Assembly (NCBI GenBank): GCA_907165135.1
Contig: OU015566.1
Coordinates: forward strand, 6,572,001 to 6,636,000
Length of the DNA stretch: 64,000 bases
Direction of reading: 5' to 3'
Source: Oikopleura dioica
Taxonomy: Eukaryota > Animalia > Chordata
Numbering within the stretch: the stretch's first letter is position 1; every line of letters begins with the position of its first letter. The notes below the pieces were generated by a model, which was given only the letters and a program-made list of their open reading frames with translations, had not been told where the DNA came from and did no database searches. This document shows, in pieces, positions 1,589 to 62,900 of the stretch. The position numbers were made by a program, and so were the translations under genes.

Positions 1589-3551
1589 TTACAACCAGTT
1601 GAATCGTTCGAATTGCGGATAGCAGTTCTCTTGATCTCGGCCTCTCTTGGTCGCCTCTTCTCGCGCATCAATGTGGTTCAGCCAGTCTTTCATGTAGTCG
1701 TCCAAATACGCGATGAACTTAATTCTGTCTTCGTTGTTTTCGGGGTTCCATGATTTGTGGAAAACATTGTGGTTCTCCTCTGGATCGAATTCGATATTGT
1801 ACAGTTCCTCTGATCCAGGAATGTATTTCATGTTTTCTTTTCGAATGGCGGCATTTTTCAGATCTGATTCGACTCCGGGAGTGTAAGCATGTGTCAGAAT
1901 CGGTTTCTTTTTCACTTCGTAGCTGGCTTCGCCTGTTTCTAGGTATGATAAGAGGCTTCTGCTGTCTGGTGCTTCGTTGCAGCCCAAGTCGTAGTCGATT
2001 AAGTCGGCAAGGGTGGCGTAGATGTCGACTGTGGAAACTTGAACCTTTGGCTCGTAGATGGTTCTTGGCGAGGGTTTTAAATAACATGATAGAAAAATCA
2101 TCTTTTATTGAGATAAATCTAGCTTTGAGAAAAATCAAGCTTTTTGGACCCTTTCCTGGGCTCGAATTTCTTCGGATAGCGCCATAAAAATGGAGTCCTA
2201 TGACTTGCCTCTCCCATTGTATTTTTGTAACCCTAATAATTTGATCGACAACAAGTCCCTTAATCGACATAAAAAGGCGAAAGTCGAATTCTTTTTTCTA
2301 TAAGTCGACCAATGCCTTGAGTTCAACAGTTCTTGCCGGTCCACCAGTAGATTCCGGCAAATCAAGTCGCCATTGACTATGCCCCCAGTTGCTAAGAATT
2401 TTCTTCCCAGTTACAGTTGGTCCATTGTCGCACATGAAAATCACGAGAGTATCGTTCACAATATCATGTTCTTCTAATTTATCAAGAATTTTTCCGACAA
2501 TCTCGTCCGTCTCCATCACCATTTCTCCAAAGAGCCCTGCTTCCGTCTGATTTCGGAATCGAGGAGGCGTGTTGAACGGTGCGTGCCCAGATTTCATTCC
2601 GTAATAGGCGAAAAACGGCTCTTCGTGATTTTCGTCGATGAAATTTTCGAGTTTTTGCTCGTCTTTTGCTCGATTTCGCGACTGTCGAAGGACTTCCCAG
2701 CGATTGTTTGGCGCATCCATGTTAGATAATAATTATTCAACTGAAATGGATCTGTGATTTCTTCTGCGTGACCAGTCGGGCCGAAATAGCCAGTGTAGGG
2801 GAAGTTATGGCCACTTGGCGAATAGTTTTCGACCGGAGTTGTTTCTGGATAAGGTTGGAGCTGAATCAAAGTATCTGCTGGTTCAGTGCTTCTTCCGTTT
2901 TCGAAGGATAAGCCGGGGCTGCAGCAAAGACCAGGCTGCGTGTACGCGTAATCATAGCCGTAAACTTCTGGTTTAGGGTTTTGTGCGTAATATCCGAATT
3001 TTTGGTGAACGGTGGCCGTATTCGGAAAGTTCAACAAACCGACTTCTTTCTTGTACTCCAACGCTTCTAGCCGGCGGGCGGTGGTTGCTTCGTTATCTTC
3101 TCGAGTAGCATTTTCGTGATTTATACCCATCGGGAACGGTTGCTGTTTTCCAAAGATTCCTGTCTTGTAGCCCGACTTTTTGAACATTTCACCAATATGC
3201 GGCTCGCCTATTTTCGAAGTTCAATAATTTTTTCGATCATAAAGAGTTTCAACAAAAAATATTCTGAACTTTCGCTTGGTTGATCATTCTAAACTGACTA
3301 TCATTCATCGAGTACCGCCCGGTCATGAGCATATATCGACTCGGCGAGCAGCGACTTGAAGCCGAATTCGCAGCTAGAAACTTCACCCCCTCATTACCGA
3401 TTCTGTCAATATTCGGCGTTGGCACTTTCGCTTCTCTGTTGTAAATTGAAAAATCTCCGATGCCGAAATCATCGACATTTAACAAGATGACGTTCGGTTT
3501 TCTCGCCTCGTTTTCAAGGGCAAAAAGGAAAAAACTTGAAAAAAGCTTCAT
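1589..3551 (-). CDS. Formylglycine-dependent (S1) sulfatase, arylsulfatase-like; apparent 1-nt frameshift near 2652-2656
   Basis: KPNVILLNVDDFGIGD, catalytic CSPSR plus LMTGRY, GYKTGIFGK, PFFAYYGMKSGHAP, TLVIFMCDNGP, GYKNTMGEASHRTPFLWRYP and DIYATLADL are all present. Confidence 0.9.
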
Positions 3552-4107: not shown

Positions 4108-4311
4108 CGACGGTAATTAGCTCTCAAAAGAAGAATCGATACTTGAGACTTCAATAATTCGAAAATATTAGCAAATGACGAAATTATATTTACGTCAATT
4201 TAGATGCGTAATTCAGATTTACGCCAAAAAGATTTTTACGAGCATTTATTTCTTATAAAACCCGCGATTTTAGTCACCTGTCCCTAAATTACACAAAACT
4301 GAAAAATAAAA

Positions 4312-6484
4312 ATGATCCTTTTTTCTTCTCTTCTCTTAGTCGCAAATGCTGGAAATTCCTGCATTCCTTCTCATTTTCACTTCACGGGCAAATATGGAAC
4401 CGTCAACTCATTTCGAGCAAAAATCATCCATGATAGCACTTACAAAGAGATCGTTCAAAAGTGCGAAAGTGCGGGTATGAACCTTCCCGAACCAATGACA
4501 CAGGAGTTCAATGACGCTCTTGTCGAGTTCTGGGTCAGCAACGACCGATGGATGGGCGATCTCCCAGTCGGAATCGCTGCTGACTGGAAAGCTCTTTCGT
4601 CTGGAGAACCAGCTTTATTCAAACAGTTCAAGAGCCCACGACCAATTATTGGCCAAATTGATCACTACGCTGTGATGAACAAGAATGGCGAATGGCATGC
4701 AGATACGAACGAGGACAGAGTCTTCCCTAGAGCCCTGTGTTTATCCAAAGAGGGAGGCACAAAATTTGAAGGTCATTCAATTAATGTTAGTGAAAGTCAC
4801 GATCCCTGCTTTGGCAAAGAAAACTGCGAGACTTTTATCAACTCTTGCGAAACCTACCCAATTCCTTCGGACAAAATCTCGACAATCGAGGCAACTGTTA
4901 ACTTCAAATCGTCAATCGATATTCAATGCAGCCATGGAATGCCGAATGGAAGATGGTTGAACATCTTTCACATTAGCGCTGGAGGAGAGATAGGACAACC
5001 GGGCGATCGCTTCTTCGCTGCATGGAGATTCCCTCATGATGAGCGGTTGCACTTCGCCCTTGGCGCGCCAGAAGGAGGATTCGCCAAGTACAAAAACTTG
5101 AACTGCGTTGATGGCGAATGGAACAAGTACACTCTTGAGCAAAGACAAGTTCCAGATTCTCTAAACACCGTGATGCTGATTTTTTCAAGGGACGATGAAG
5201 TTCTTCTGACCGGATATTACGGTGTCAAAGATGTCTTCACCGGATCTGTTGATGTTTTCTTATCAAGAAGACCAAGTTTGAGAGAAATCGCTTCTGACTA
5301 CGCTGTTCGAAAGTTTTACTACCAAAAATTTCCCGAAATTGAGCCCGAAGAGTGTACCAATCGTTCTGACCCATGTAAAGGACTTGAAAATTGCCAAACT
5401 TTCATCGACTCCTGCACCTCAAACCCATCAACGACCAATAAAATTGGAACAATCGAAGCCACTCCGAATTTCAGAACCGCTATCGATGTTCAATGTACAC
5501 ATGGCATGAGTAAAGGACGATGGCTGAATATCTTCCATATGACTCATATGATATGAGTGCGGGAGGTGAAATAGGAAAGCCAGGTGATCGATTCTTCGCT
5601 GCATGGAGATTTCCGAGCGATGAACGACTTCATTTTGCTCTTGGTGTTCCCGAAGGAGGATTTGCCAAGTATCAAAACCTCAATTGCAATGATGGCGAGT
5701 GGAACACATATGTTCTCGAGCAGAAACAAGATCAAGATGACCCGAATGTCGTCGTCTTGAGCTTTTCTATTGACGGAAATAAAATTGCCTCGTATACTTA
5801 TGCTACTTCAGCGGTTCTCTCGGAGGTACCAGTTGATGTTTTCTCGTCTCGTCGCCCTCAACTTAGGGAAATTGCATGGAAAAGCGCTGTTCGAAACTTC
5901 TACTACCAAGAATTTCCTGAAATCATACCAGAAGAGTGCACAAATGGCTCCGATCCATGTGACGGTCTCGAAAACTGCGAGACTTACATTGACAGCTGCA
6001 AAATCACTCCATTTGCTGGAAATCAGATCGCGAAAACAAATGGCTACGATCAATTTAAAATAACTGCAGAAGTACGATGCACTAATAGAGTCGCTCAAAC
6101 GTGGGAGAATGTTTTGCATGTCAACACAGGCACTAGTCGCCAAAACTTCGGAGATCGCTACTTTACGATCTGGAAGAAACACGGCTCATCCAATGAACTC
6201 CGAATCGTCGCTCCCGTTCTCGGCAATGACTTCGATGAATTGAACGCGTACGTCAATTGCGAAGAAGGATGGCACACATTCACTGTCCAACAGAGCGCTT
6301 TCGATGAGAAACAAATGAACGTCGAGATCATTTTTGACGGAGATGTCGTAAAAACCAACTCGTTCGAAAAGAAGATGTTTTCAACGGCTCCCTGAACGTC
6401 GAAGTTGCTTCCAACTTTGGCTGGCCAGCTGCGACAGATCATTACGTCCGAAACTTCTTCCACCAAGACATGTCAAACGAATGA
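4312..6484 (+). pseudogene. Intronless secreted protein: C-type-lectin-like domain plus three ~170-190 aa 'GDRYF' modules; two frameshifts (~5539, ~6372)
   Basis: Signal MILFSSLLLVANA, then a CTLD-like segment (C..AGMNLPEP...N.AL...YAVMNKNGEWHAD...RALC) and three repeats starting DPC.G.ENC.T(F/Y)I.SC. Homology continues across frames after the 14-nt insertion at 5539 and at ~6372 (DVFNGSLNVEVASNFGWPAATDHYVRNFFHQDMSNE*). Confidence 0.75.
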
Positions 6485-6731
6485 ATAATCAGTTATTTTC
6501 AATAAATACTCATGAAAACCTGAAACATGAATGAATTTTGTCAATTCTTTATAAGAATAAAATTTGGAAACGAGTGCTCAATTGAACCACTCTGATGGCG
6601 TTTGCCATACAGACAAATATTTGAACACAACGCATGCAGAAAGACAATCGCGCTTTCCCTCTAACAAAATATTCTGCAGAAAGAGAAAAGGTTTTCGGGC
6701 GAAAAGAAGACGTCATTTTCGAATAGCTAGA

Positions 6732-15211: not shown

Positions 15212-17541
15212 ATGCTTTGGTACTTCATCGTTATTTTCGGGATGATCGGTTTCGGGCTCTACAAAGTCTTCTCCATGGACAAAGGGAATGAGTTGCCGCA
15301 CGGATTGTTCGACGAAAAACCGAAGCCCGGAATGCGTGTTATTCAGAAATTCAAAGAATACTTTAGAAAAATTATTAAAGAAAAGGTAAGCAGCAAGAAA
15401 AGTTGGGCGAAGTCAATTTGATTGCAGAAACTGAGAAGCTGCTTGCGGCCCAGAGTAAAGAAAAGTCGATTAACCCACGCTAAGCGCGGCTTACATCGAC
15501 GATGTAACATCGTCCTTTTACTCGAAGCCGCAAGCGGCTTCTCGGTTTCAGCAATAATTTCTCAATTAGTTGAAAATTCCTAAATTAAAATTTCAGGATA
15601 CGCGTAATTTATTCTTCTTCATCTGTATCAACCTTTCATTCGCCTTCGTGGAATTATTCTACGGAATCTGGACCAACTCGCTTGGTCTCGTTTCCGATGC
15701 GTTTCACATGTTTTTCGATTGTTCTGCACTCTTGCTTGGCCTCGTCGCTGCCGTTGTCGCCAGGTGGAGTCCCAACGATAGATACACCTATGGCTACGTT
15801 CGAGCTGACACCCTGGCTGGCTTTGTCAACGCGATCTTTTTAGTCTTCATCGCTTTTTTCATCCTTTCTGAAGCCATTGAGGTGAGTTTCTCTGATTTTG
15901 ACACTCTTGGAATTCTAAAATTCTAGCGACTGGTCGAACCAGTCCACATTCACCACGAAAAACTGCTCAGCGTCAGTATCATGGGTCTGCTTGTAAATAT
16001 CATCGGCATCTTCGTCTTCGCTCATGGCGGTTCTCATGGGCACTCTCATGGAGGCCACGGACACTCGCATGGTGGACATTCACATGGCCACTCGCATGGG
16101 CACGTTTCGGCCGCTGCTGCTGATCATGGTCACTCACATGGACATTCTCATGGAGATCATGGACATTCGCACGGGCACTCGCATGGAGATACGTATGGAG
16201 ATAACTCGGTAAGTTCTTCCTTTAAGGGTACTATCTTCGATTTCACCAACTTGAGCCTTGAATAACTCGGAACTTGTAAATGATTGCTGAATCAATATGG
16301 GCTCATTGAATAGACCTGTCCTAGATCTTAACTATTACAGAGGGGTTTATTAATTGCTTGACCGAAAAGCGGCTAAATTTTGGCTTGAAGTGGTCATCTT
16401 CGCCAAAATGGCCTATATAAACGGCTGAATAACTCAAAAACAAGTCTGAAAACTTGGCCTTATTATATTTTTATATGTAATTTGAACCTTAATCTTTAAA
16501 ATTACAGAAGGAATTTTTGATTGAAAAACTAAAAATACCAAAAATAATTTTTTGAAAATTGTGTCTCGCAGATTTTGCGAAAATTGAGCATTTTTTAAAA
16601 TTTTGCGACATATTTTTGGCTCTAGAATCGAAAATATCTTGATGTAGCGATCGATACAGCTACCAACATACTGCTCTTGCTCTGAGCTTTCGAACAAGCC
16701 GTTGATCAAGAAAATCGAAGTTCAAAATTTTTTTTCGATAAAACTTCTAGTGGCCATATCTCAAGATATATTGATAATTTCGAATAGTTGTCAATAAGGT
16801 ATAATTATAAAATTTTATGAAGAATCCATCTCTTATAACCGATTCTTATAAATCTTTCGAAAGGTCACCTTCTGGAAATCGAAGATAGTACCCTTAAGAA
16901 GGCATTTTGGGTCTTCGTCGGGGGTTCTTTTGAGAGTTGCCTTTTGTATAAAATCAATTTCAGACGGGCAATATGGCGATCATGCAAGGTGCCTTCCTCC
17001 ACATTCTCGCCGACACGATGGGTTCCGTCGGCGTCATTATCTCAACACTTCTGATCGACTGGTTCGGATGGCATCGTGCTGATCCGATCGCCTCGATCTT
17101 CATTGCTATAATGACGCTCATCTCCGTAAAGCCACTGTTAATGGAAACAACGACGACGTTACTTCAGCGTTCTCCGCCAGAACTCGACAATACGCTTCCA
17201 TCGGCGTATTCTCAGCTGATGAGGCTAGAAGGAGTCGAACGGCTGGAAGAGGCACATGCCTGGACGCTAGCAAAGGGACAGACGATATGCAGCGTGAAAA
17301 TTAAGACTTCAATTGATGCTAATCCCAGAAAGTAAGTCACTCAAAAGTGGTCATTTTTAACAAAAATTTTTATCGATAATAATATCTGAGAAAGGGTTGA
17401 TAATCCTTACGAAGCATTAGTCGGCCAGAGAACTAGCCCCGAGGCTATTTTAATAACTCTCGAATTTTTAGGATCACTCAAGATGCGACCAACGCGATCA
17501 TGTCTGCCGGAGTTCACCGAGTGTTCATCCATCTCAACTAG
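15212..17541 (+). CDS. SLC30A7: Zinc transporter ZnT7 (CDF family)
   Basis: DTRNLFFFICINLSFAFVELFYGIWTNSLGLVSDAFHMFFDC, YGYVRADTLAGFVNA, a long (HG/HS)n His-rich loop, and GAFLHILADTMGSVGVI. Confidence 0.92.
15421..15555. mobile_element. Palindromic mini-MITE (GAGAAGCCGCTTGCGGCTTCGAG family), copy 1
   Basis: ~40-bp imperfect TIRs and a central AAGCGCGGCTT; same family as 63528-63625. It lies in SLC30A7 intron 1. Confidence 0.75.
16226..16893. mobile_element. 668-bp MITE with 19-bp TIRs and TTAA target duplication
   Basis: TTAA|GGGTACTATCTTCGATTTC ... GAAATCGAAGATAGTACCC|TTAA. It fills nearly all of the SLC30A7 intron after the His loop. Confidence 0.88.
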
Positions 17542-55833: not shown

Positions 55834-55949
55834 TTAGTGACAATCTAAAAAATATCCCTTCTAGAAAACATCAAAGTTAGCTTCAAAGTTCAGACGGCTT
55901 GATACTTCAGTCAACTCAAATCAAAAGTACCAAGAGTTTGAGATGATTT

Positions 55950-55987
55950 TAAGGGTTAGGGTTAAGGTTAGGGTTAGGGTTAGGTTA
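55950..55987 (+). repeat. Interstitial telomere-like (TTAGGG)n tract
   Basis: TAAGGGTTAGGGTTAAGGTTAGGGTTAGGGTTAGGTTA. Confidence 0.8.
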
Positions 55988-56132
55988 TCAAATGCAGAAA
56001 ACTTACTGATAAGATTTTTTGTGAGAATAGACCAGATGTCTTTATAAGTCAAATTTTTCCGAGACAAATTTTCCGACCATGTGGTTGATTCCCATCAGAA
56101 TCCTTCAGAATGTCAGTCCTGACTGATTAGTT

Positions 56133-57123
56133 ATGCAAGAGATGATCATAAGCGCCATTTTTCTAATTTTCAGTGCTTTTGCGCAAGAATGCCCGTAAGT
56201 ACTTAGACTTCAGTCTCAAGACATTTGATCTTTTATCCTTATGCAGACTCGACTACAATTACTGTAAAATTCTGTGCGAGACTGACTACTGCATAAGCAT
56301 CTGCGAGCGAGAGTACGACTGTATGATTGATTAATAAGATAAAAACTCATTAATTTTAGTGTGCAATGACAACTGTCCTTGTGAGAAAAACTGCCCCTTT
56401 GGCTGCGAAGGCTGCGACAACCCGATCTGTCCTGCTGAGGAATGCTCTGATCCTTGCTACGGGCTCGAGAGCTGCGAGACATTCGTAAACAGCTGTGAAG
56501 TCACGCCTTCTTTCAATAATACCATTGCTGAGACTCAAGGAAGCAAGAGTTATAAAATCTCTGCAGATGTCAAATGCGGCGAAATTCCCGACGAGTGGGC
56601 GAACATCATTCATGTCAATACAGGAAGTTCTTGGGACGTTCTTGGTGACAGATATTTTGCACTCTTTATCAATTCGACTGACTTGATGAAATTCTGTGGG
56701 CCATTAAATTGTTTATTGTAGAAAACTGGATTCAGAAAATACTCATCAAAGTATTATTCACATGACCAAAGGTGGATACCGAGGGGAATTTGGGGACCGC
56801 TACTTTGCGGTTTGGCATGTGCCAGATCAAAGGCTTAAAATAAACGGTCCATTTTTAAATGGTAACAAATTTTACGAGGTCGAGTACTTTGCTGAGTGTC
56901 AGGAGAATACGTGGACAACAATCTCAATTCAACAAGTTGAAGTCGAGAGAAGGGTGCTCGAACTTTCCTTATTTCAGGATGGCAACCTTCTAGTATCAAG
57001 ACAGCTTCAGCAAGACGAAGCGTTTATCGGCCCGATTGAGGTCTATGCTGGAAGTTGGGAACTGCAACCAGCGACATTTTTCCGAATCAAGAATTTTGTT
57101 CATTCTTCTCGATTACCACAATA
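56133..57123 (+). pseudogene. Cys-rich + GDRYF-module secreted protein, copy 1 (internal deletion, out-of-frame fusion of two modules)
   Basis: Signal MQEMIISAIFLIFSAFAQECP, CNDNCPCEKNCPFGCEGCDNPIC, and the first half of a module ending at TAG 56719-56721. A different frame resumes VYCRKLDSENTHQSIIHMTKGG..GDRYF to the end. Confidence 0.7.
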
Positions 57124-57266
57124 AAAATTTTATTCGCTCGAGTCTACTACTTAATTTAAGAAAATTTGCATGTCAAAGGTCTAACGCAAAATTCATATTT
57201 ACACTGTTGTGGTTTCATAATTTGAACTTTCTCATTTTTGGTCAGTCTGAAGCTTTCCCCGCAATT

Positions 57267-57930
57267 ATGCAAGAGATACGTCAGCCAACTTTCGTTTTGA
57301 TATTTCTGGGAGCTTTTGCTCGAGCATGCCCGTAAGTTAGTTGATAAACACTTCCTAGTACATCTCAAACAACCAATTTTCATAAGTGACACTGAGCTTG
57401 GAGAAGAATGCAAGGACATATCATATGTCACATATGCCGAGTTGAATTTTCTCGCTGTCGACTTCTTTGCGAGAGCGATTACTGTTTGAACCAGAGAAAG
57501 GTTCAGAATTTCAGCAGAAGTCTTTTGCGGCGAAATTCCATCTACAGTAGGCTGGAAAGAGTGGCGAAACATTATTCATGTCAATACAGGCACTAATTGG
57601 GATGTTTTGGGCGACAGATATTTTACACTATTTATAAACGCACAAGGATACATGAAATTCGATGGATCCTTGAAAGGAGAACAATATGATATGGTCGCTT
57701 TTTTCCCAATTTGAACGACTGGCGAATGGAACACTTATACAGTCCAGCAGATTGAAGTTGATGGAACCCTTGAATTATCACTTTCTATTGATGATAAGGT
57801 CCTCGGTACTTTTGATGTTGAACTAGAAGATGCATTTTCTGGAAAGCTGTATGTAAATGTCGCAAATGAGTTTCATGGTGCTGCTGACTTTTTTCCCGTT
57901 CGCTACTTTTATCACCAAACATTTCAATAA
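57267..57930 (+). pseudogene. Cys-rich + GDRYF-module secreted protein, copy 2 (deletion, frameshift, nonsense)
   Basis: Signal MQEIRQPTFVLIFLGAFARACP. After CESDYCLN it jumps out of frame to ERFRISAEVFC, and there is an in-frame TGA at 57712-57714 where copy 3 has Cys. Confidence 0.85.
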
Positions 57931-58006
57931 AAAGCTTAACAAAAAAGGTCGATTTATTGAATTATCAGTTTTATATATTTTTCAAACAGCAGGTTAGAGT
58001 ATGCAA

Positions 58007-58270
58007 CTAGCATTTTTCAAGCGTCCGCCAAACTCTCTCTTGTCGATTACGCTCTTCCTGGTGCTCTTCCTGATGCTCTTTGAGAAACTGTAAAAACAAT
58101 CGTTGTCGTTGGAGAAAACTCTCTTCTGTTTCTTTCATCGGGCCTTCGATGTACTCTTCTATCTTCGAGATTCTGCGAAATTGCCAAAACTCGAACCAAA
58201 AAAGAACAAGTACTAAAAGCGAAAGAACCAGGGCAATCAAACACCCAAGGAAACAGTTTTCTGGTTTCAT
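58007..58270 (-). CDS. 87-aa single-pass membrane protein, orphan
   Basis: TTTTTAG immediately before the ATG, TM FLGCLIALVLSLLVLVLFWFEFW, a charged helical tail and AATAAA downstream. Confidence 0.55.
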   Translation of the reverse strand: MKPENCFLGCLIALVLSLLVLVLFWFEFWQFRRISKIEEYIEGPMKETEESFLQRQRLFLQFLKEHQEEHQEERNRQERVWRTLEKC

Positions 58271-58597
58271 CTAAAAATTTCAGATGCATCCCTTTTTATA
58301 CTCGCGATTAATCATTGACAATCATTTTTTAGCGACTTGTCACTAAGTACGTGAACAAACGTGAGAAATTCCAATGGATTCTTGATCCATCGCGCAAACG
58401 ATTATGCAATTCTTCTCACTAGAAGTCACTTGAATTGATCCACCATGAGAATTTTATTATAGTCGTTTCACAAAATTTGCATATGCGCAGAAACGCAATC
58501 ATGCCATGAAAATTTCATATTTACACTTCTGTGTCTTCATCGTTTGAACTTTCTCTTTTTCTTTGATCCGCCACCTAAAGTTTGACCCACAATAACT

Positions 58598-59633
58598 ATG
58601 AAAGAGATTCGTGAGGCATTTTTCCTCTTATCACTTTTCGGAGCCTTTGCTCAAGAATGCCCGTAAGTTCGTTAAAAGCAAATTTATACCCCTTACTAAA
58701 GGGCCCTTAGTAGGGTTAGGTTAGGGTTTAGGGTTGGGTTAGGGTTACTAACCCTGGCTTAGGGGAAGGAGTCCCGTCTGCTAAAATTATTCTTAGAGTT
58801 AGGGTTAGGGTTTACTGTATGATTCATACATTATATTTTTATTAGAGACGCGGATCTTGGAGAAGACTGCAAAGACATATGCCGAGTAGAATTTACTCGT
58901 TGTCGACTTCTTTGTGAGAGTGATTACTGTCTCTCGATCTGCGAGCGCGAATATGAAAGTAATAATTTCAATTTTAATTGATCATTTCATCAAAAGTATA
59001 GTTCGTAAAAACGCTTGTCCGTGCGAGATTGACTGCCCTCTTGGGTGCGAATCTTGCGAGAATAAAATTTGTCCGGAAATCATCATCGACCCCTGCGCTG
59101 ATCTAGAAAACTGCGAAACCTTCGTCGACAATCGTCAAATCAGTCCTTCCTTCAACAACACTATTGCGGAGATATATGGCGAGAAGAGATTTCGAATCTC
59201 CGCAGAAGTGTATTGCAATGAGATTCCGGGATTCGATGAGTCCGATCAGAGTACCAAAAGCTGGCGCAATATTGTCCATGTGAACACTGGTCAAAATCAT
59301 GCTGTTCCCGGCGACAGATATTTTGCGCTTTTCCTTCACTTGAATGGTACAATGAAGATCGTTGGACCCTTGAAAGAAGGATATCAGAACATGGCTGCGT
59401 TTTGGACAACAGGATGTACAACTGAAGAGTGGAATACTTATGGCGTTCAGCAAATTGAGAAGAACGGAACTCTCGAATTGTCACTTTCTATCGATGATGA
59501 AGTCCTTGGTACTTTTGATGTTGAGCCAAAAGATGCATTTTCCGGAAAATTATTTGTAAATGTTGCGAATAAGTACCACAGTCCTGCTGACTTTTTCCCC
59601 GTCCGAAACTTCTACCACCAAACTTTTCAATAA
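58598..59633 (+). CDS. Cys-rich + GDRYF-module secreted protein, copy 3 (apparently intact)
   Basis: Signal MKEIREAFFLLSLFGAFAQECP, DCKDICRVEFTRCRLLCESDYCLSICEREYE, ACPCEIDCPLGCESCENKICP, then one full module ending VRNFYHQTFQ*. Confidence 0.85.
58689..58812 (+). repeat. Telomere-like (TTAGGG)n-containing insertion with a terminal near-palindrome
   Basis: CCCTTACTAAAGGGCCCTTAGTAGGG followed by TTAGGG variants. It is in intron 1 of copy 3 and absent from the short homologous intron of copy 2. Confidence 0.75.
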
Positions 59634-59991: not shown

Positions 59992-62900
59992 TTATCTCTT
60001 CGTCGTGCTCTGGAAGACCTCTTCTCCGAGAATTTCGATTTGAGTTGCGCGCAGTTTATTTTCGCGGTCGCTTATTGCTGGTTGAGGAGGTATCGAGGTC
60101 CAGGATCGTTGGAGTTCCCTGACATAGAAAGTATTATTCTGGTGAAGAAAGTCCTGAAATTACCTGATATGGTCTCCATATTTGACCTCTCCCCAGTTCA
60201 TTTTTCGACATATCTCTGGTGAACCTTTCCGCAGGACATTTCGTTGAATCCAACTGTGTTCTCGCTGAGTATCGACGCTCTAAAATGGATGTTATTTACT
60301 TTACGATGGAATCTTTTAAAGTAAGCTACTAAGATAAAGGAGGTCCTTTAGGGAACACTATGATCGGATTAAGTACCTCTACGCATTGTTCTTTGACCGC
60401 TGCGATGTTCTTCCTGAGCTTCATGACTTCTTGCGCCATTCTCGTGGTGCCAAACGCCTTGATTTTTTCGTTGAACACAGCAAGAAAGTGATCGTAGATC
60501 GCCGTGTCGAGCTTGTTCCAGCTGCGGATCTTCTGGCTGAGGACGGGGTCCACGGCGACTCGCTCCGTGCGCGTCTTCAGCTGCAGATACACCAAGTCTT
60601 CATCCGTCATGCACATCAGCTCCTAAACACGATCAATTTTGAACGATTTCTAGAATTTCTCGTTCAAACGTTCAACATTCCGCTTCTATGTGAACATTTG
60701 ACTTTGGGAGATTACAAGGGCCGATCTGCAGATGGCAATAAAGTCCTCGGCTGTCGAGAGGACGGGCCACTTACTTTGAGGAGGATTAGCGACTCTTCGA
60801 AATAGTCAGTCAGCAGGACGAGATGGTATGTTTGTTCTAGTTCTTCGATGGCACTTTCGATGTAGCTTGCGCTCTCGCTTTCATGTTCAAGCCCGAGATC
60901 GAAGGACATGTAGTTTTTCCCTCTAAAAATAATGATAAGCGGATTCAATGAACTTTGAACTGATTGATTCTATCAGTTGGTGTTTCTAGCTACCTGAAAT
61001 ACCAAGGAGTCTTCTTGTTATACAGTCCGCTTGGATTTTTCATGAAATCAATAATCGTTCCATTTTCTCCAACCCATTGCGGGAAAGGATAATCTCGGAA
61101 GAAGCCGAATTCAGATTCGAAGTTTCCAACGGGATCTCGGAGCATGGTGATGAACACGTGATCTGGATGGGTTACTTTTTTAATATCTGGGCCATATCTT
61201 CCATGATTTCAAAAAAGGAGTTTTTGCTTAAAATTTGTAGTAAAACTAAACAAATAGCGGAAAAAGAGAAATTATCTTTTTTGAAACGCTTCCTGAAATG
61301 GTGGCACATAAGATTGTACTTGGGCAAAATCGGATCTATCAGTTCCGTGTCAAACAAGCCAGGGTATCCTGCCAGTTCCCAGTGGGAGCCAAATGGCAGT
61401 CCCGTCACCAAGTGATGTTTCTCCGCATACCGCAGCAGAATATTCGTCAAAGTCGTGCCCCCTGTTTTATGCGTCTGAAAAGTATGTTTTTCGAACTCGC
61501 TTTGATGTTTTCTTAGTACCTTGGTAAAGACTAAGTTTCTTCGCGGCACTCCTTCGCAGCTCGGTAAATTCGGCCTTTGATAAACTTTCGGGTGATTGAT
61601 GTACTCTTCGTGTTGAACTGTCGGGACTCCCTTAATTCGCGGTTAATAAAACATCATCAATAAAAAAATTGAGACAGGTTAAGTGCGAGCTTGTTGAAAT
61701 TATTTCTTATAGTTTCAATTAGTTTAATGACCAATAAAAATAAAAGAAGATTTGTTTTTGTCCTGAAAAAAAAACCGGGTGTCATAAAAATAGTTTGCCA
61801 CTGATGAACTATCAGCTATATTTACCCTGCTCATTCTAGCGCGAACTTCGATCTCATAGTTCATCTTTTGCGCCCTTGCCCTTGCCGTGATAAACAGTAG
61901 CGCCCCAACTACAGTAGCAAAGGCGATAACGTCTCTCATGTTCCAGCATAGGAGTTTCCTGCTACTCAATCTTTTCTTTTTCGCCCTCATCGACTTTTCA
62001 CTACTCGGCTGTCCGCGAGCAGGCTTGAGCTCATCTCTGGCCCTGATTTTCGAAAAGACGAAATCAAAAAAAAACTCAAAATTGGAAGCTTAAAAATTTG
62101 AGCGCCGCGTCCTGGCAGCGTGTCCGGCGCAATTTAAGAAAATCTGAAAAAATTAGAGAGAGATTCAAGAGCACCGCCGCCGACCGCGGATTTTCAGCGA
62201 CACGAGCGCCAAATTTTCACCTCCAAACATGGCTCCCGGCGCATTTTCTATCATGTACTGCAGGAATAGGTTTTACAGCTTTCATGGATTAGCCGCAAAC
62301 GGGGCGCCAAGGAAATACGGATTCTGGATTAAATATCTCCGGCATAATTTATCTGCGCTCCATGATTTGGGAAATTAGGATTTTCTAGCGCTTTGTTTTC
62401 AAGATTTTCAATGCCCAAGCTCAGCAACCTGTTTCAAAACCTGAGTCAGGGTCTGATAAGATTTTGACTAAAGAGCCGCACAGCGGCATTTTTCTAACGA
62501 AGCCGCGGAGCGGCTTTGCCAAATTTATCCTCGATTTTTGAGACACGGATCTTCTTGGACCCTGGGTCAGGTTTCTACACAGTTTCCCAATCTCAGCTTG
62601 AAACGACCTTAAAATCAAAAAAAGAGTCATCAAAAGAGACGACATACGGCTTTTCCCTGCACAAACTAATTTCCCTGCAACATGTCAAACAGAGAGAAAG
62701 GCGTAATCAAGACAAAGGAGCGTGTGGCTGAAGATGCACCAGAAAATTGTTGTGGCTCGAGCTACAATAGCGGCGACCTTTCGCGGTTGCGCCATGAAAT
62801 GTCTCGCAGGGAGGTTTTTTAGGATTTCTTAACATTCGTCTATATTATAGACTCTATAATTAATGAGTTTAAATTTTGGTCTGGATTTTTTCAATCCTTT

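What the first reader, a model, noticed from the sequence alone, without database searches (positions are those of the whole stretch)
4312..6484. An unnamed ~170-aa secreted module ('GDRYF') mixed and matched with different N-terminal heads
The module reads DPC.GLE.CETF..SC...PS..N.I......F.I.A.V.C....W.NI.H...G....GDR(Y/F)F..W...L....C..GEW.TY...Q....L....D.....D.F.G...V.....VRNFY.Q.F. It occurs three times here behind a C-type-lectin-like head, and at three more loci 50 kb away (56133, 57267, 58598) behind a Cys-rich head. Alternating hydrophobic residues and conserved Trp/His/Arg suggest a ConA/galectin-like beta-sandwich with a sugar-binding face. Domain shuffling, tandem duplication and frequent disruption point to a fast-evolving secreted glycan-recognition system, either house structural proteins (oikosin-like) or innate-immune lectins. 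This is my best candidate for an undescribed system in the window.
Basis: partly seen in the sequence, partly recalled or inferred. Interest (0 to 1): 0.8.

Follow-up and report, generated by a model that had tools for sequence, protein, structure and literature searches.

The report
Divergent LamG-like module of Oikopleura house proteins
The repeated 'GDRYF' module is real: it is a very divergent laminin-G/concanavalin-like beta-sandwich domain, copied more than 150 times in the Oikopleura dioica genome and present in a proven 'house' protein (Oikosin 30c), so it is an unannotated branch of a known fold, not a new kind of system.

Summary
The window has six copies of a ~185-aa, six-cysteine module: three in tandem behind a C-type-lectin-like head (gene A, 4312-6484) and three behind a Cys-rich head (genes B, C and D, 56133-59633).

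It holds at least 152 matching segments, in tandem arrays of up to 8 modules.

- **Databases:** Pfam and PDB sequence searches find nothing above threshold.
- **Fold:** AlphaFold2 (pLDDT 93) gives a ConA-like/LamG jelly roll (VIA Z 10-11.6).
- **Relatives:** an exhaustive profile search finds repeats in Hydra and chlorarachniophytes. Pfam calls some of these Laminin_G_3, and profile-profile homology is 99.5%.
- **House link:** Oikosin 30c, a named house protein, carries one full module that Pfam leaves unannotated.

My reading is a secreted matrix building block. Ligand binding is untested.

Three of the four window genes are damaged:
- Gene A has a real 14-nt frameshifting insertion.
- Gene B is a truncated a/b hybrid.
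- Gene C is a pseudogene.
- Gene A's second 'frameshift' is an assembly homopolymer error.

Verdict: a new variant of a known kind, of moderate interest. This scan has not noted the module on other DNA.

Side lead: the 14-nt insertions belong to a genome-wide class of 22-nt scars that look like hAT excision footprints.

The parts
4312..6484 (+). Gene A, single exon: signal peptide, CTLD-like head, three tandem modules. The reference haplotype is truncated by a frameshift.
   Evidence: ORFs, sequence, reads. AATAAA lies at 6501-6506.
4354..4800 (+). C-type-lectin-like head (149 aa). No Pfam hit and no EPN/QPD or WND motif.
   Evidence: AF2 pLDDT 69, pTM 0.65. The listed Foldseek hits (top 50) are all CTLDs or CTLD-containing complexes, TMq 0.41-0.59. 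Pfam is blank. Paralogous copies sit inside four other proteins.
4801..5367 (+). Module 1 (subtype d), intact.
5368..5951 (+). Module 2 (subtype d), broken by a 14-nt insertion. The resulting stop is TGA at 5554-5556.
   Evidence: contigs spanning 5265-5650 with 0 differences.
5536..5557 (+). 22-nt scar of the form T(1-7)+revcomp(T)+T(2-8) with T=CATATGAG. It is a net 14-nt insertion.
5952..6484 (+). Module 3 (subtype c; 82% identical to the second module of the 8-module array at C4:5.80 Mb). The apparent frameshift is an assembly error: one base is missing after 6349.
   Evidence: (table 4: A or C put in behind 6349 in all contigs).
56133..56721 (+). Gene B, three exons (56133-56194, 56247-56320, 56360-56721): signal peptide, Cys-rich head and the N-terminal half of a subtype-a module. 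It ends at TAG 56719-56721.
56762..57124 (+). C-terminal two thirds of a subtype-b module downstream of gene B's stop. It is a remnant of an a-b pair with an internal deletion.
   Evidence: b clade, 100 support.
57267..57930 (+). Gene C, a pseudogene copy of the gene D type. Half of the head and about 35 aa of the module are deleted. It has a 22-nt scar at 57415-57436 and an in-frame TGA at 57712-57714.
58598..59633 (+). Gene D, three exons (58598-58662, 58846-58958, 59002-59633), 269 aa: signal peptide, Cys-rich head of about 65 aa and one subtype-a module. The frame is open, but the conserved third Cys of the cap is Arg.
   Evidence: (GT-AG introns of 183 and 43 nt).

Best explanation
The 'GDRYF' module is a disulfide-stapled beta-sandwich domain of about 185 aa. 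It has six conserved Cys, four of them in an N-terminal cap (C-x(3-7)-DPC-x(5)-C-x(6)-C). It belongs to the concanavalin-A-like / laminin-G superfamily and lies closest to Pfam Laminin_G_3, but it has diverged too far to be called by Pfam.

In Oikopleura dioica the module has been amplified into a large family of secreted extracellular-matrix proteins:
- tandem arrays of up to 8 modules behind various heads;
- single modules attached to VWD/C8/TIL, EGF_CA, CTLD, ShK, Cys-rich or Thr/Pro-rich mucin-like segments.

At least one member, Oikosin 30c, is a proven component of the filter-feeding house.

I infer that the modules act as multivalent binding and cross-linking units that help assemble the house matrix. 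Their likely partners are the cellulose or glycan scaffold, or other oikosins.

The window lies at the edge of a module-rich stretch of contig C4 (about 5.80-6.63 Mb) and holds four small, young members:
- Gene A (CTLD head plus d-d-c modules) carries a 14-nt frameshifting scar in the assembled haplotype.
- Gene B is a truncated a/b hybrid.
- Gene C is dead.
- Gene D is open but lacks one cap cysteine.

Shown: repeats, fold, homology, partner domains, presence in Oikosin 30c, and the disruptions. Inferred: secretion (read from the N-termini), a house location for the window genes, and ligand binding.
For: - Copies in the window and in the genome.
- Alignment and conserved Cys.
- AF2 model with pLDDT 93.1 and pTM 0.89, 12 strands.
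- ConA-like/LamG matches: Foldseek; VIA Z 10-11.6, with 125 chains at Z>=8, to BoNT Hcn, the ADGRG4 PTX-like domain, LamG/LNS, CBM40 and GH16; Laminin_G_3 clusters in the ESM Atlas at TM 0.62-0.68.
- Exhaustive profile search: 548 representatives at E<=1e-3. The named ones are O. dioica, Hydra vulgaris, Bigelowiella and Lotharella.
- The Hydra and chlorarachniophyte repeats pass the Laminin_G_3 threshold. hhalign of A1 against A2 gives 99.5%, E 2.9e-22, 161 columns.
- Partner domains VWD/TIL/C8/Lectin_C/ShK/EGF_CA.
- Oikosin 30c (P0179) has a full module at 1733-1907 (86 bits, i-E 5e-27) directly after C8. Pfam sees only VWD, C8 and TIL there.
- Two intact 8-module array genes with Pro/Thr-rich linkers.
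- Saturated dS with dN 0.1-0.6 between copies shows long purifying selection.
- Module subtypes a, b, c and d, and the origin of the window copies.
- Hosp et al. 2012 (PMC3390340) identify the oik30 family as house proteins and report 35 of 80 oikosins with no detectable similarity.
Against: - No window module reaches a Pfam threshold. In the alignment only 4 of 54 members hit Laminin_G_3 and 13 of 54 hit 3keto-disac_hyd, all below threshold.
- There is no RNA evidence for the window genes. The two RNA runs gave only partial reads at 90-95% identity, from a relative or another lineage.
- No ligand-binding residue could be mapped, because the tools return no model coordinates.
- Only one named oikosin was shown to carry the module, and its copy is a divergent subtype (GSR instead of GDR, cap altered).
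- Three of the four window genes are damaged, so these particular copies may have no function.
Confidence: 0.7

Rival explanations
1. The module proteins are soluble innate-immune pattern-recognition lectins. They would recognise microbial glycans and evolve fast under pathogen pressure.
For: Lectin-like folds for both the head (CTLD) and the module. Large copy number, tandem duplication, pseudogenes and about 10% divergence between haplotype contigs.
Against: The only characterised relative is a structural house protein. The partner domains (VWD, C8, TIL, EGF_CA, mucin-like linkers) are typical of polymerising matrix proteins. The CTLD head lacks the EPN/QPD and WND sugar/Ca motifs on reading. 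dN is well below a saturated dS, which argues against diversifying selection overall.
Confidence: 0.12
2. The module is a passive structural spacer. It would be a rigid bead in a beads-on-a-string fibre, with no specific ligand.
For: Arrays of 8 near-identical-length modules with short linkers. Conservation is mostly of core and Cys positions.
Against: A surface-loop motif (H-x-T-x-G ... G-D-R-x-[FP]-x-x-W) is conserved from Oikopleura to Hydra and chlorarachniophytes. A pure spacer would not be expected to keep such a motif. ConA-like/LamG domains usually bind ligands (established knowledge).
Confidence: 0.13
3. The module is a catalytic ConA-like domain, such as a GH16-type glucanase or a polysaccharide lyase, that remodels the house polysaccharide.
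For: GH16 laminarinases and glucanases and a polysaccharide lyase are among the structural matches at Z 9.6-10.6.
Against: No invariant acidic pair exists. The invariant columns are C, P, S, R and W only, so a GH16-type ExDxxE motif is absent. The structural matches are no better than those to non-enzymatic LamG, pentraxin or BoNT Hcn domains.
Confidence: 0.03

Closest known systems
Pfam Laminin_G_3 (PF13385), Concanavalin A-like lectin/glucanase clan
   Same: The same jelly-roll beta-sandwich. Profile-profile homology (99.5%) to Hydra and chlorarachniophyte repeats, some of which pass the Laminin_G_3 threshold.
   Different: No window module reaches the Pfam threshold. The module adds a four-Cys N-terminal cap plus two core Cys. 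It also has its own signature (W-N-I-x-H-V-T-x-G...G-D-R-[YF]-F...V-R-N-F-[YH]-Q).
Oikosin 30 family (Hosp et al. 2012; Oikosin 30c, W8W0Z5_OIKDI)
   Same: Oikosin 30c contains one full module at 1733-1907. Okinawan relatives P0073 and P0178, and the Norwegian protein CBY13343, also carry one.
   Different: Those proteins are VWD/C8/TIL proteins of about 250-400 kDa with a single, divergent module (GSR instead of GDR, cap altered). The window genes are small (about 30-80 kDa) and consist mostly of modules. The 2012 paper did not annotate this domain.
Hydra vulgaris uncharacterised multi-repeat proteins (e.g. LOC100212432, LOC105845300) and chlorarachniophyte proteins (Bigelowiella natans, Lotharella globosa)
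   Same: Tandem arrays of 5-17 homologous units with the same H-x-T-x-G...G-D-R...W and ...S-D-P-W-Y...N-L motifs.
   Different: They lack the Cys cap and score only 15-50 bits per unit. They combine with TSP1, DUF5648 and CBM_4_9. No function is known for them.
LamG/LNS domains of laminin, neurexin and agrin; pentraxin-like domains; BoNT Hcn; CBM40
   Same: Shared fold at VIA Z 9.4-11.6 with 134-158 aligned residues. Many of these are Ca2+- or glycan-dependent binding modules in extracellular proteins.
   Different: Sequence identity is 5-13%. The rim Ca2+/ligand site could not be checked. The disulfide pattern differs.

Membership tests
Pfam Laminin_G_3 (PF13385) | Score at or above the Pfam gathering threshold (27.6 bits) | tested here: not met
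   None of the window modules reaches it. In A1, 4 of 54 members give sub-threshold hits, best E 0.001.
Pfam Laminin_G_3 / ConA-like clan | Concanavalin-like two-sheet jelly-roll fold | tested here: met
   AF2 pLDDT 93, 12 strands. Foldseek gives 427 PDB hits at E<=1e-3, all ConA-like folds among those listed. VIA Z reaches 11.6. Atlas LamG_3 clusters score TM 0.62-0.68.
Pfam Laminin_G_3 / ConA-like clan | Sequence homology to bona fide members | tested here: met
   hhalign of A1 against A2 gives 99.5%, E 2.9e-22. 12 of 33 A2 units hit Laminin_G_3 at E<=0.01, and the one unit shown passes the gathering cut-off. Whole proteins score up to 5e-42.
LamG/pentraxin-type ligand-binding domains | Rim Ca2+/ligand-binding residues | not testable with these tools
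   The tools return no model coordinates, so no residue mapping was possible.
Oikosins (house proteins) | Protein detected in the house proteome | not testable with these tools
   Not testable for the window genes. The relative Oikosin 30c is a named oikosin (Hosp et al. 2012) and carries the module.
Oikosins (house proteins) | Expression in the oikoplastic epithelium | tested here: inconclusive
   Two whole-animal RNA runs gave only partial reads at 90-95% identity, from a relative or another lineage. No tissue data were available.
Oikosins (house proteins) | Secretory signal peptide | tested here: met
   Met by reading only, since no predictor was available. Genes A, B, C and D each have a short hydrophobic N-terminus followed by Cys-rich sequence.
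C-type lectin-like domain (head of gene A) | CTLD fold | tested here: met
   AF2 pLDDT 69 from a 7-row alignment. The listed Foldseek hits (top 50) are all CTLDs or CTLD-containing complexes (tetranectin, collectins, CLEC9A), TMq 0.41-0.59. Confidence is moderate.
C-type lectin (Ca2+-dependent sugar binding) | Pfam Lectin_C hit plus the EPN/QPD and WND motifs | tested here: not met
   No Pfam hit even at E<=10. The motifs are absent on reading the alignment.
GH16-type glucanases | Conserved catalytic ExDxxE acidic residues | tested here: not met
   The invariant and near-invariant columns of A1 contain no such pair.

The most novel reading that the evidence does not exclude
This one hyper-diverged LamG-like module may be the main building block of many of the 'orphan' oikosins (35 of 80 with no detectable similarity). 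If so, much of the apparently de novo house proteome descends from an old domain shared with cnidarians and chlorarachniophytes. The modules would then be the missing cellulose- or glycan-binding units that pattern the house scaffold.
Probability: 0.2. Interest if true: 0.7.

Novelty: new variant of a known kind. Interest (0 to 1): 0.45.

Why it matters
The Oikopleura house is a model for how a complex extracellular machine evolves. Almost half of its known proteins were reported to have no recognisable relatives.

This work gives a fold (ConA-like/LamG), a profile and outgroup relatives to a family of more than 150 modules, one of which sits in Oikosin 30c. That makes three things directly testable:
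- How much of the 'orphan' house proteome is really diverged old domains.
- Which modules bind the cellulose scaffold.
- How tandem arrays and head swapping generate new matrix proteins.

The profile could also seed a new Pfam family, which would improve annotation of appendicularian, Hydra and chlorarachniophyte genomes.

Tried and rejected
- **Pfam on all window pieces and heads**: nothing above threshold.
- **PDB sequence searches** with one module and with the profile: only chance-level hits.
- **Word-indexed protein search** with gene A's first ORF and with alignment A1: only 3 and 2 unnamed metagenome proteins, so no names. The third search, with P0073, did give Oikosin 30c.
- **ESM Atlas by sequence features**: only weak LamG_3 leads.
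- **Literature**: no description of this domain in Oikopleura. Supplementary tables give molecular weights and accessions but no sequences. I therefore did not pursue size matches, such as 8-module arrays against oik40/41.
- **RNA support for gene A**: not obtained.
- **Micro-intron reading of the 14-nt insertion:** rejected. It has no GT-AG and is far below intron size.
- **Gene B joined by a 61-nt GT-AG intron:** this is possible in frame, but it would duplicate the GDRYF strand. It has no RNA support and I treat it as unlikely.
- **dN/dS by NG86:** failed for most pairs because dS is saturated.

Handling of sequences:
- The spliced models of genes B and D were only translated in a local script.
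- For the dN/dS comparison only, the 14-nt insertion was left out of module 2 inside a script.

Full report
**What is there**

The genome has 64,281,565 bases in 19 contigs. The window is C4:6572001-6636000.

- **Gene A (4312-6484).** A single-exon gene: a short hydrophobic N-terminus, a 149-aa head, then three modules.
- **Genes B, C and D.** They start at 56133, 57267 and 58598. Each has a signal-like N-terminus, a Cys-rich head split by short GT-AG introns, and one module.

**The module**

An alignment of 54 non-redundant copies from the window and the rest of the genome (A1) shows a unit of about 185 aa. Invariant residues are C3, C9, P20, S38, C43, R70, C102 and W107.

**Is it known by sequence?**

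Pfam gives nothing above threshold for any window piece. PDB sequence searches with one module or with the profile give only chance hits. Scanning all 54 members gives only sub-threshold hits, and these fall in one clan: 3keto-disac_hyd in 13, Laminin_G_3 in 4, Laminin_G_2 in 2.

**Fold**

AlphaFold2 on A1 gives a confident all-beta model with pLDDT 93.1, pTM 0.89 and 12 strands.

- Foldseek against the PDB returns 427 hits at E<=1e-3. Those listed are all ConA-like jelly rolls: NEL TSPN, CBM40, BoNT Hcn, legume lectins, pentraxin, collagen IX NC4 and galectin.
- The independent VIA search gives Z 10-11.6 over 134-170 aligned residues to BoNT/NTNH Hcn, the ADGRG4 pentraxin-like domain, LamG/LNS domains, sialidase lectin domains and GH16. 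In all, 125 chains reach Z>=8.
- The nearest ESM Atlas clusters are mostly Laminin_G_3, at TM 0.62-0.68.

**Relatives**

The exhaustive profile search of 1.84 billion representatives finds 548 proteins at E<=1e-3. They fall into two classes.

- **High scorers.** Hits above about 60 bits per unit, many of which keep the Cys cap. Every one that carries a name is from O. dioica. The rest are unnamed marine-metagenome or Logan proteins.
- **Remote repeats.** Units of 15-50 bits without the cap, in arrays of up to 17. Where named, these are from Hydra vulgaris, Bigelowiella natans and Lotharella globosa.

Pfam calls those remote proteins Laminin_G_3, up to E 5e-42 for the whole protein. Of 33 excised units, 12 hit Laminin_G_3 at E<=0.01, and the one unit shown passes the gathering cut-off. 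Their consensus keeps the same motifs: H-F-T-x-G-x-N...Y-G-D-R-x-P-G-x-W and A-S-D-P-W-Y...N-L. hhalign of A1 against these units gives 99.5% probability, E 2.9e-22, over 161 columns.

The Oikopleura module is therefore a hyper-divergent, Cys-capped branch of the Laminin_G_3 / ConA-like superfamily. It is unannotated, but it is not a new fold.

**Size and architecture of the family**

The genome holds at least 152 matching segments, which is a lower bound. Many fall on C4 between 5.80 and 6.63 Mb, which includes the window, and on C1 between 13.8 and 16.8 Mb.

Two genes examined in full each have 8 tandem modules. They sit behind a different N-terminal region and a Pro/Thr-rich linker, in open frames of 1597 and 1826 aa.

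Single modules also occur in other contexts:
- with VWD/TIL/C8, Lectin_C and ShK (CBY13343);
- with five VWD stretches and TIL (OKI chr1.g3625);
- with EGF_CA (CBY10238);
- behind a head of about 165 aa with no Pfam hit (chr2.g5799).

A quick maximum-likelihood tree shows well-supported module subtypes. The careful search did not finish, and support is SH-aLRT only.
- Genes B (N-terminal half), C and D carry subtype a.
- Gene B's downstream piece is subtype b.
- Gene A's modules 1 and 2 are subtype d, and module 3 is subtype c. Module 3 is 82% identical to the second module of the C4:5.80 Mb array.
- That array runs b-c-d-d-d-d and then two further modules of another clade. Gene A's d-d-c order is therefore a rearrangement, and gene B looks like an a-b pair with an internal deletion.

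Mixing and matching of modules and heads is real.

**Link to the house**

A search with the VWD-containing member P0073 returned 'Oikosin 30c' (W8W0Z5_OIKDI, 2450 aa). The A1 profile finds a full module in it at 1733-1907 (86.4 bits, i-E 5e-27), and a weaker C-terminal piece. Pfam sees only VWD, C8 and TIL in that protein, and the module starts right after a C8 domain.

Hosp et al. 2012 (PMC3390340) identified the oik30 family (253-400 kDa, VWD-containing) as house proteins. They also reported that 35 of 80 oikosins had no detectable similarity to anything. The module is thus a component of at least one proven house protein, which favours the matrix reading. No such evidence exists for the window genes themselves.

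**The heads**

Gene A's head has no Pfam hit. An AF2 model from a shallow 7-row alignment (pLDDT 69) matches only C-type lectin-like domains among the listed hits. The Ca2+/sugar motifs are absent on reading.

The same domain, at 56-57% identity, is inserted in two paralogous 669-aa proteins, and more distantly in two others. It has therefore been moved between genes.

**State of the window genes**

Short-read contigs of two DNA runs span 5265-5650 without any difference, so the 14-nt insertion in module 2 is real in this haplotype. It truncates gene A after 414 aa. All contigs carry one more base after 6349, so the second break is an A-run assembly error.

A second set of contigs differs by about 10%. 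It does not align across the insertion site, so the state of the other allele is unknown.

- Gene B ends at TAG 56719-56721, inside the module.
- Gene C lacks part of the head and module. It has a 14-nt insertion and an in-frame TGA.
- Gene D is open (269 aa), but Arg replaces the third cap Cys.

dS between copies is saturated while dN is 0.1-0.6, so the family evolved under purifying selection and the breaks are recent. The two RNA runs laid gave only partial reads at 90-95% identity. Their loose ends read like an orthologous or paralogous module, so expression of the window genes is not shown.

**How it most likely works**

Shown: a secreted-type architecture, a LamG-like fold, multivalent arrays, matrix-type partner domains, and presence in Oikosin 30c.

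Inferred: the modules bind the cellulose or glycan scaffold, or other oikosins, and cross-link the house matrix. The loop motif conserved as far as Hydra suggests a specific interaction rather than a passive spacer.

The immune-lectin and enzyme readings are less likely, for the reasons given under rival explanations.

**Side observation**

Both 14-nt insertions have the form T(1-7)+revcomp(T)+T(2-8) for an 8-mer T. The CATATG version occurs 39 times in the genome, against 0-1 for a reversed control. Nearly all cases obey the rule.

This fits hAT-type excision, in three steps:
- an 8-bp target duplication;
- flank hairpins;
- annealing of the opened hairpins through the 8-nt complementarity.

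O. dioica is reported to lack classical NHEJ (PMC6635534), and earlier notes report young hAT elements in its exons. This is a lead, not a result.

**Verdict**

The module is a new, unannotated variant of a known domain superfamily, and it is of moderate interest.

Noticed in passing
window 5536-5557, 15492-15513, 57415-57436, 62838-62859; also L009:2886, L012:2896, L052:400, L057:6977: Recurrent 22-nt scars of the form T(1-7)+revcomp(T)+T(2-8) for an 8-mer T, each a net 14-nt insertion. Two of them frameshift module genes. The CATATG form occurs 39 times genome-wide against 0-1 for the control. They look like hAT excision footprints repaired through the 8-nt target-duplication microhomology, in a genome reported to lack classical NHEJ.
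   Followed up: partly
window 6349-6350: The assembly lacks one base in an A-run. All short-read contigs of two runs have an extra A or C here, which creates a false frameshift in module 3.
   Followed up: yes
window 4250-6550: Short-read contigs fall into two sets, one identical to the window and one about 10% different (for example 50 differences in 513 nt). This is either a very divergent second haplotype or a collapsed recent duplicate. The divergent set does not align across 5328-5558.
   Followed up: partly
window 55945-55990 and 58712-58815: Short interstitial telomere-like (TTAGGG)n runs lie about 140 nt upstream of gene B's start codon and inside intron 1 of gene D.
   Followed up: no
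L052:1198-3207 (-), L053:193-2202 (+), L054, L055: The CTLD-like head of gene A is also inserted in the C-terminal part of two paralogous 669-aa proteins (56-57% identity), and more distantly in two intron-containing paralogues. This is a domain insertion shared between unrelated genes.
   Followed up: partly
window 2594-3551 (-): A sulfatase-like gene lies just upstream of gene A on the opposite strand. It has a signal-like N-terminus and a C-S-P-S-R motif.
   Followed up: no
L056:1681-6471, L057:1113-6590: The two 8-module array genes share another unannotated N-terminal domain (about 100 aa...F-T-E-P-V...W-N-H-P...D-G-N-F...S-A-Q-x-C-R-C) ahead of a Pro/Thr-rich linker.
   Followed up: no
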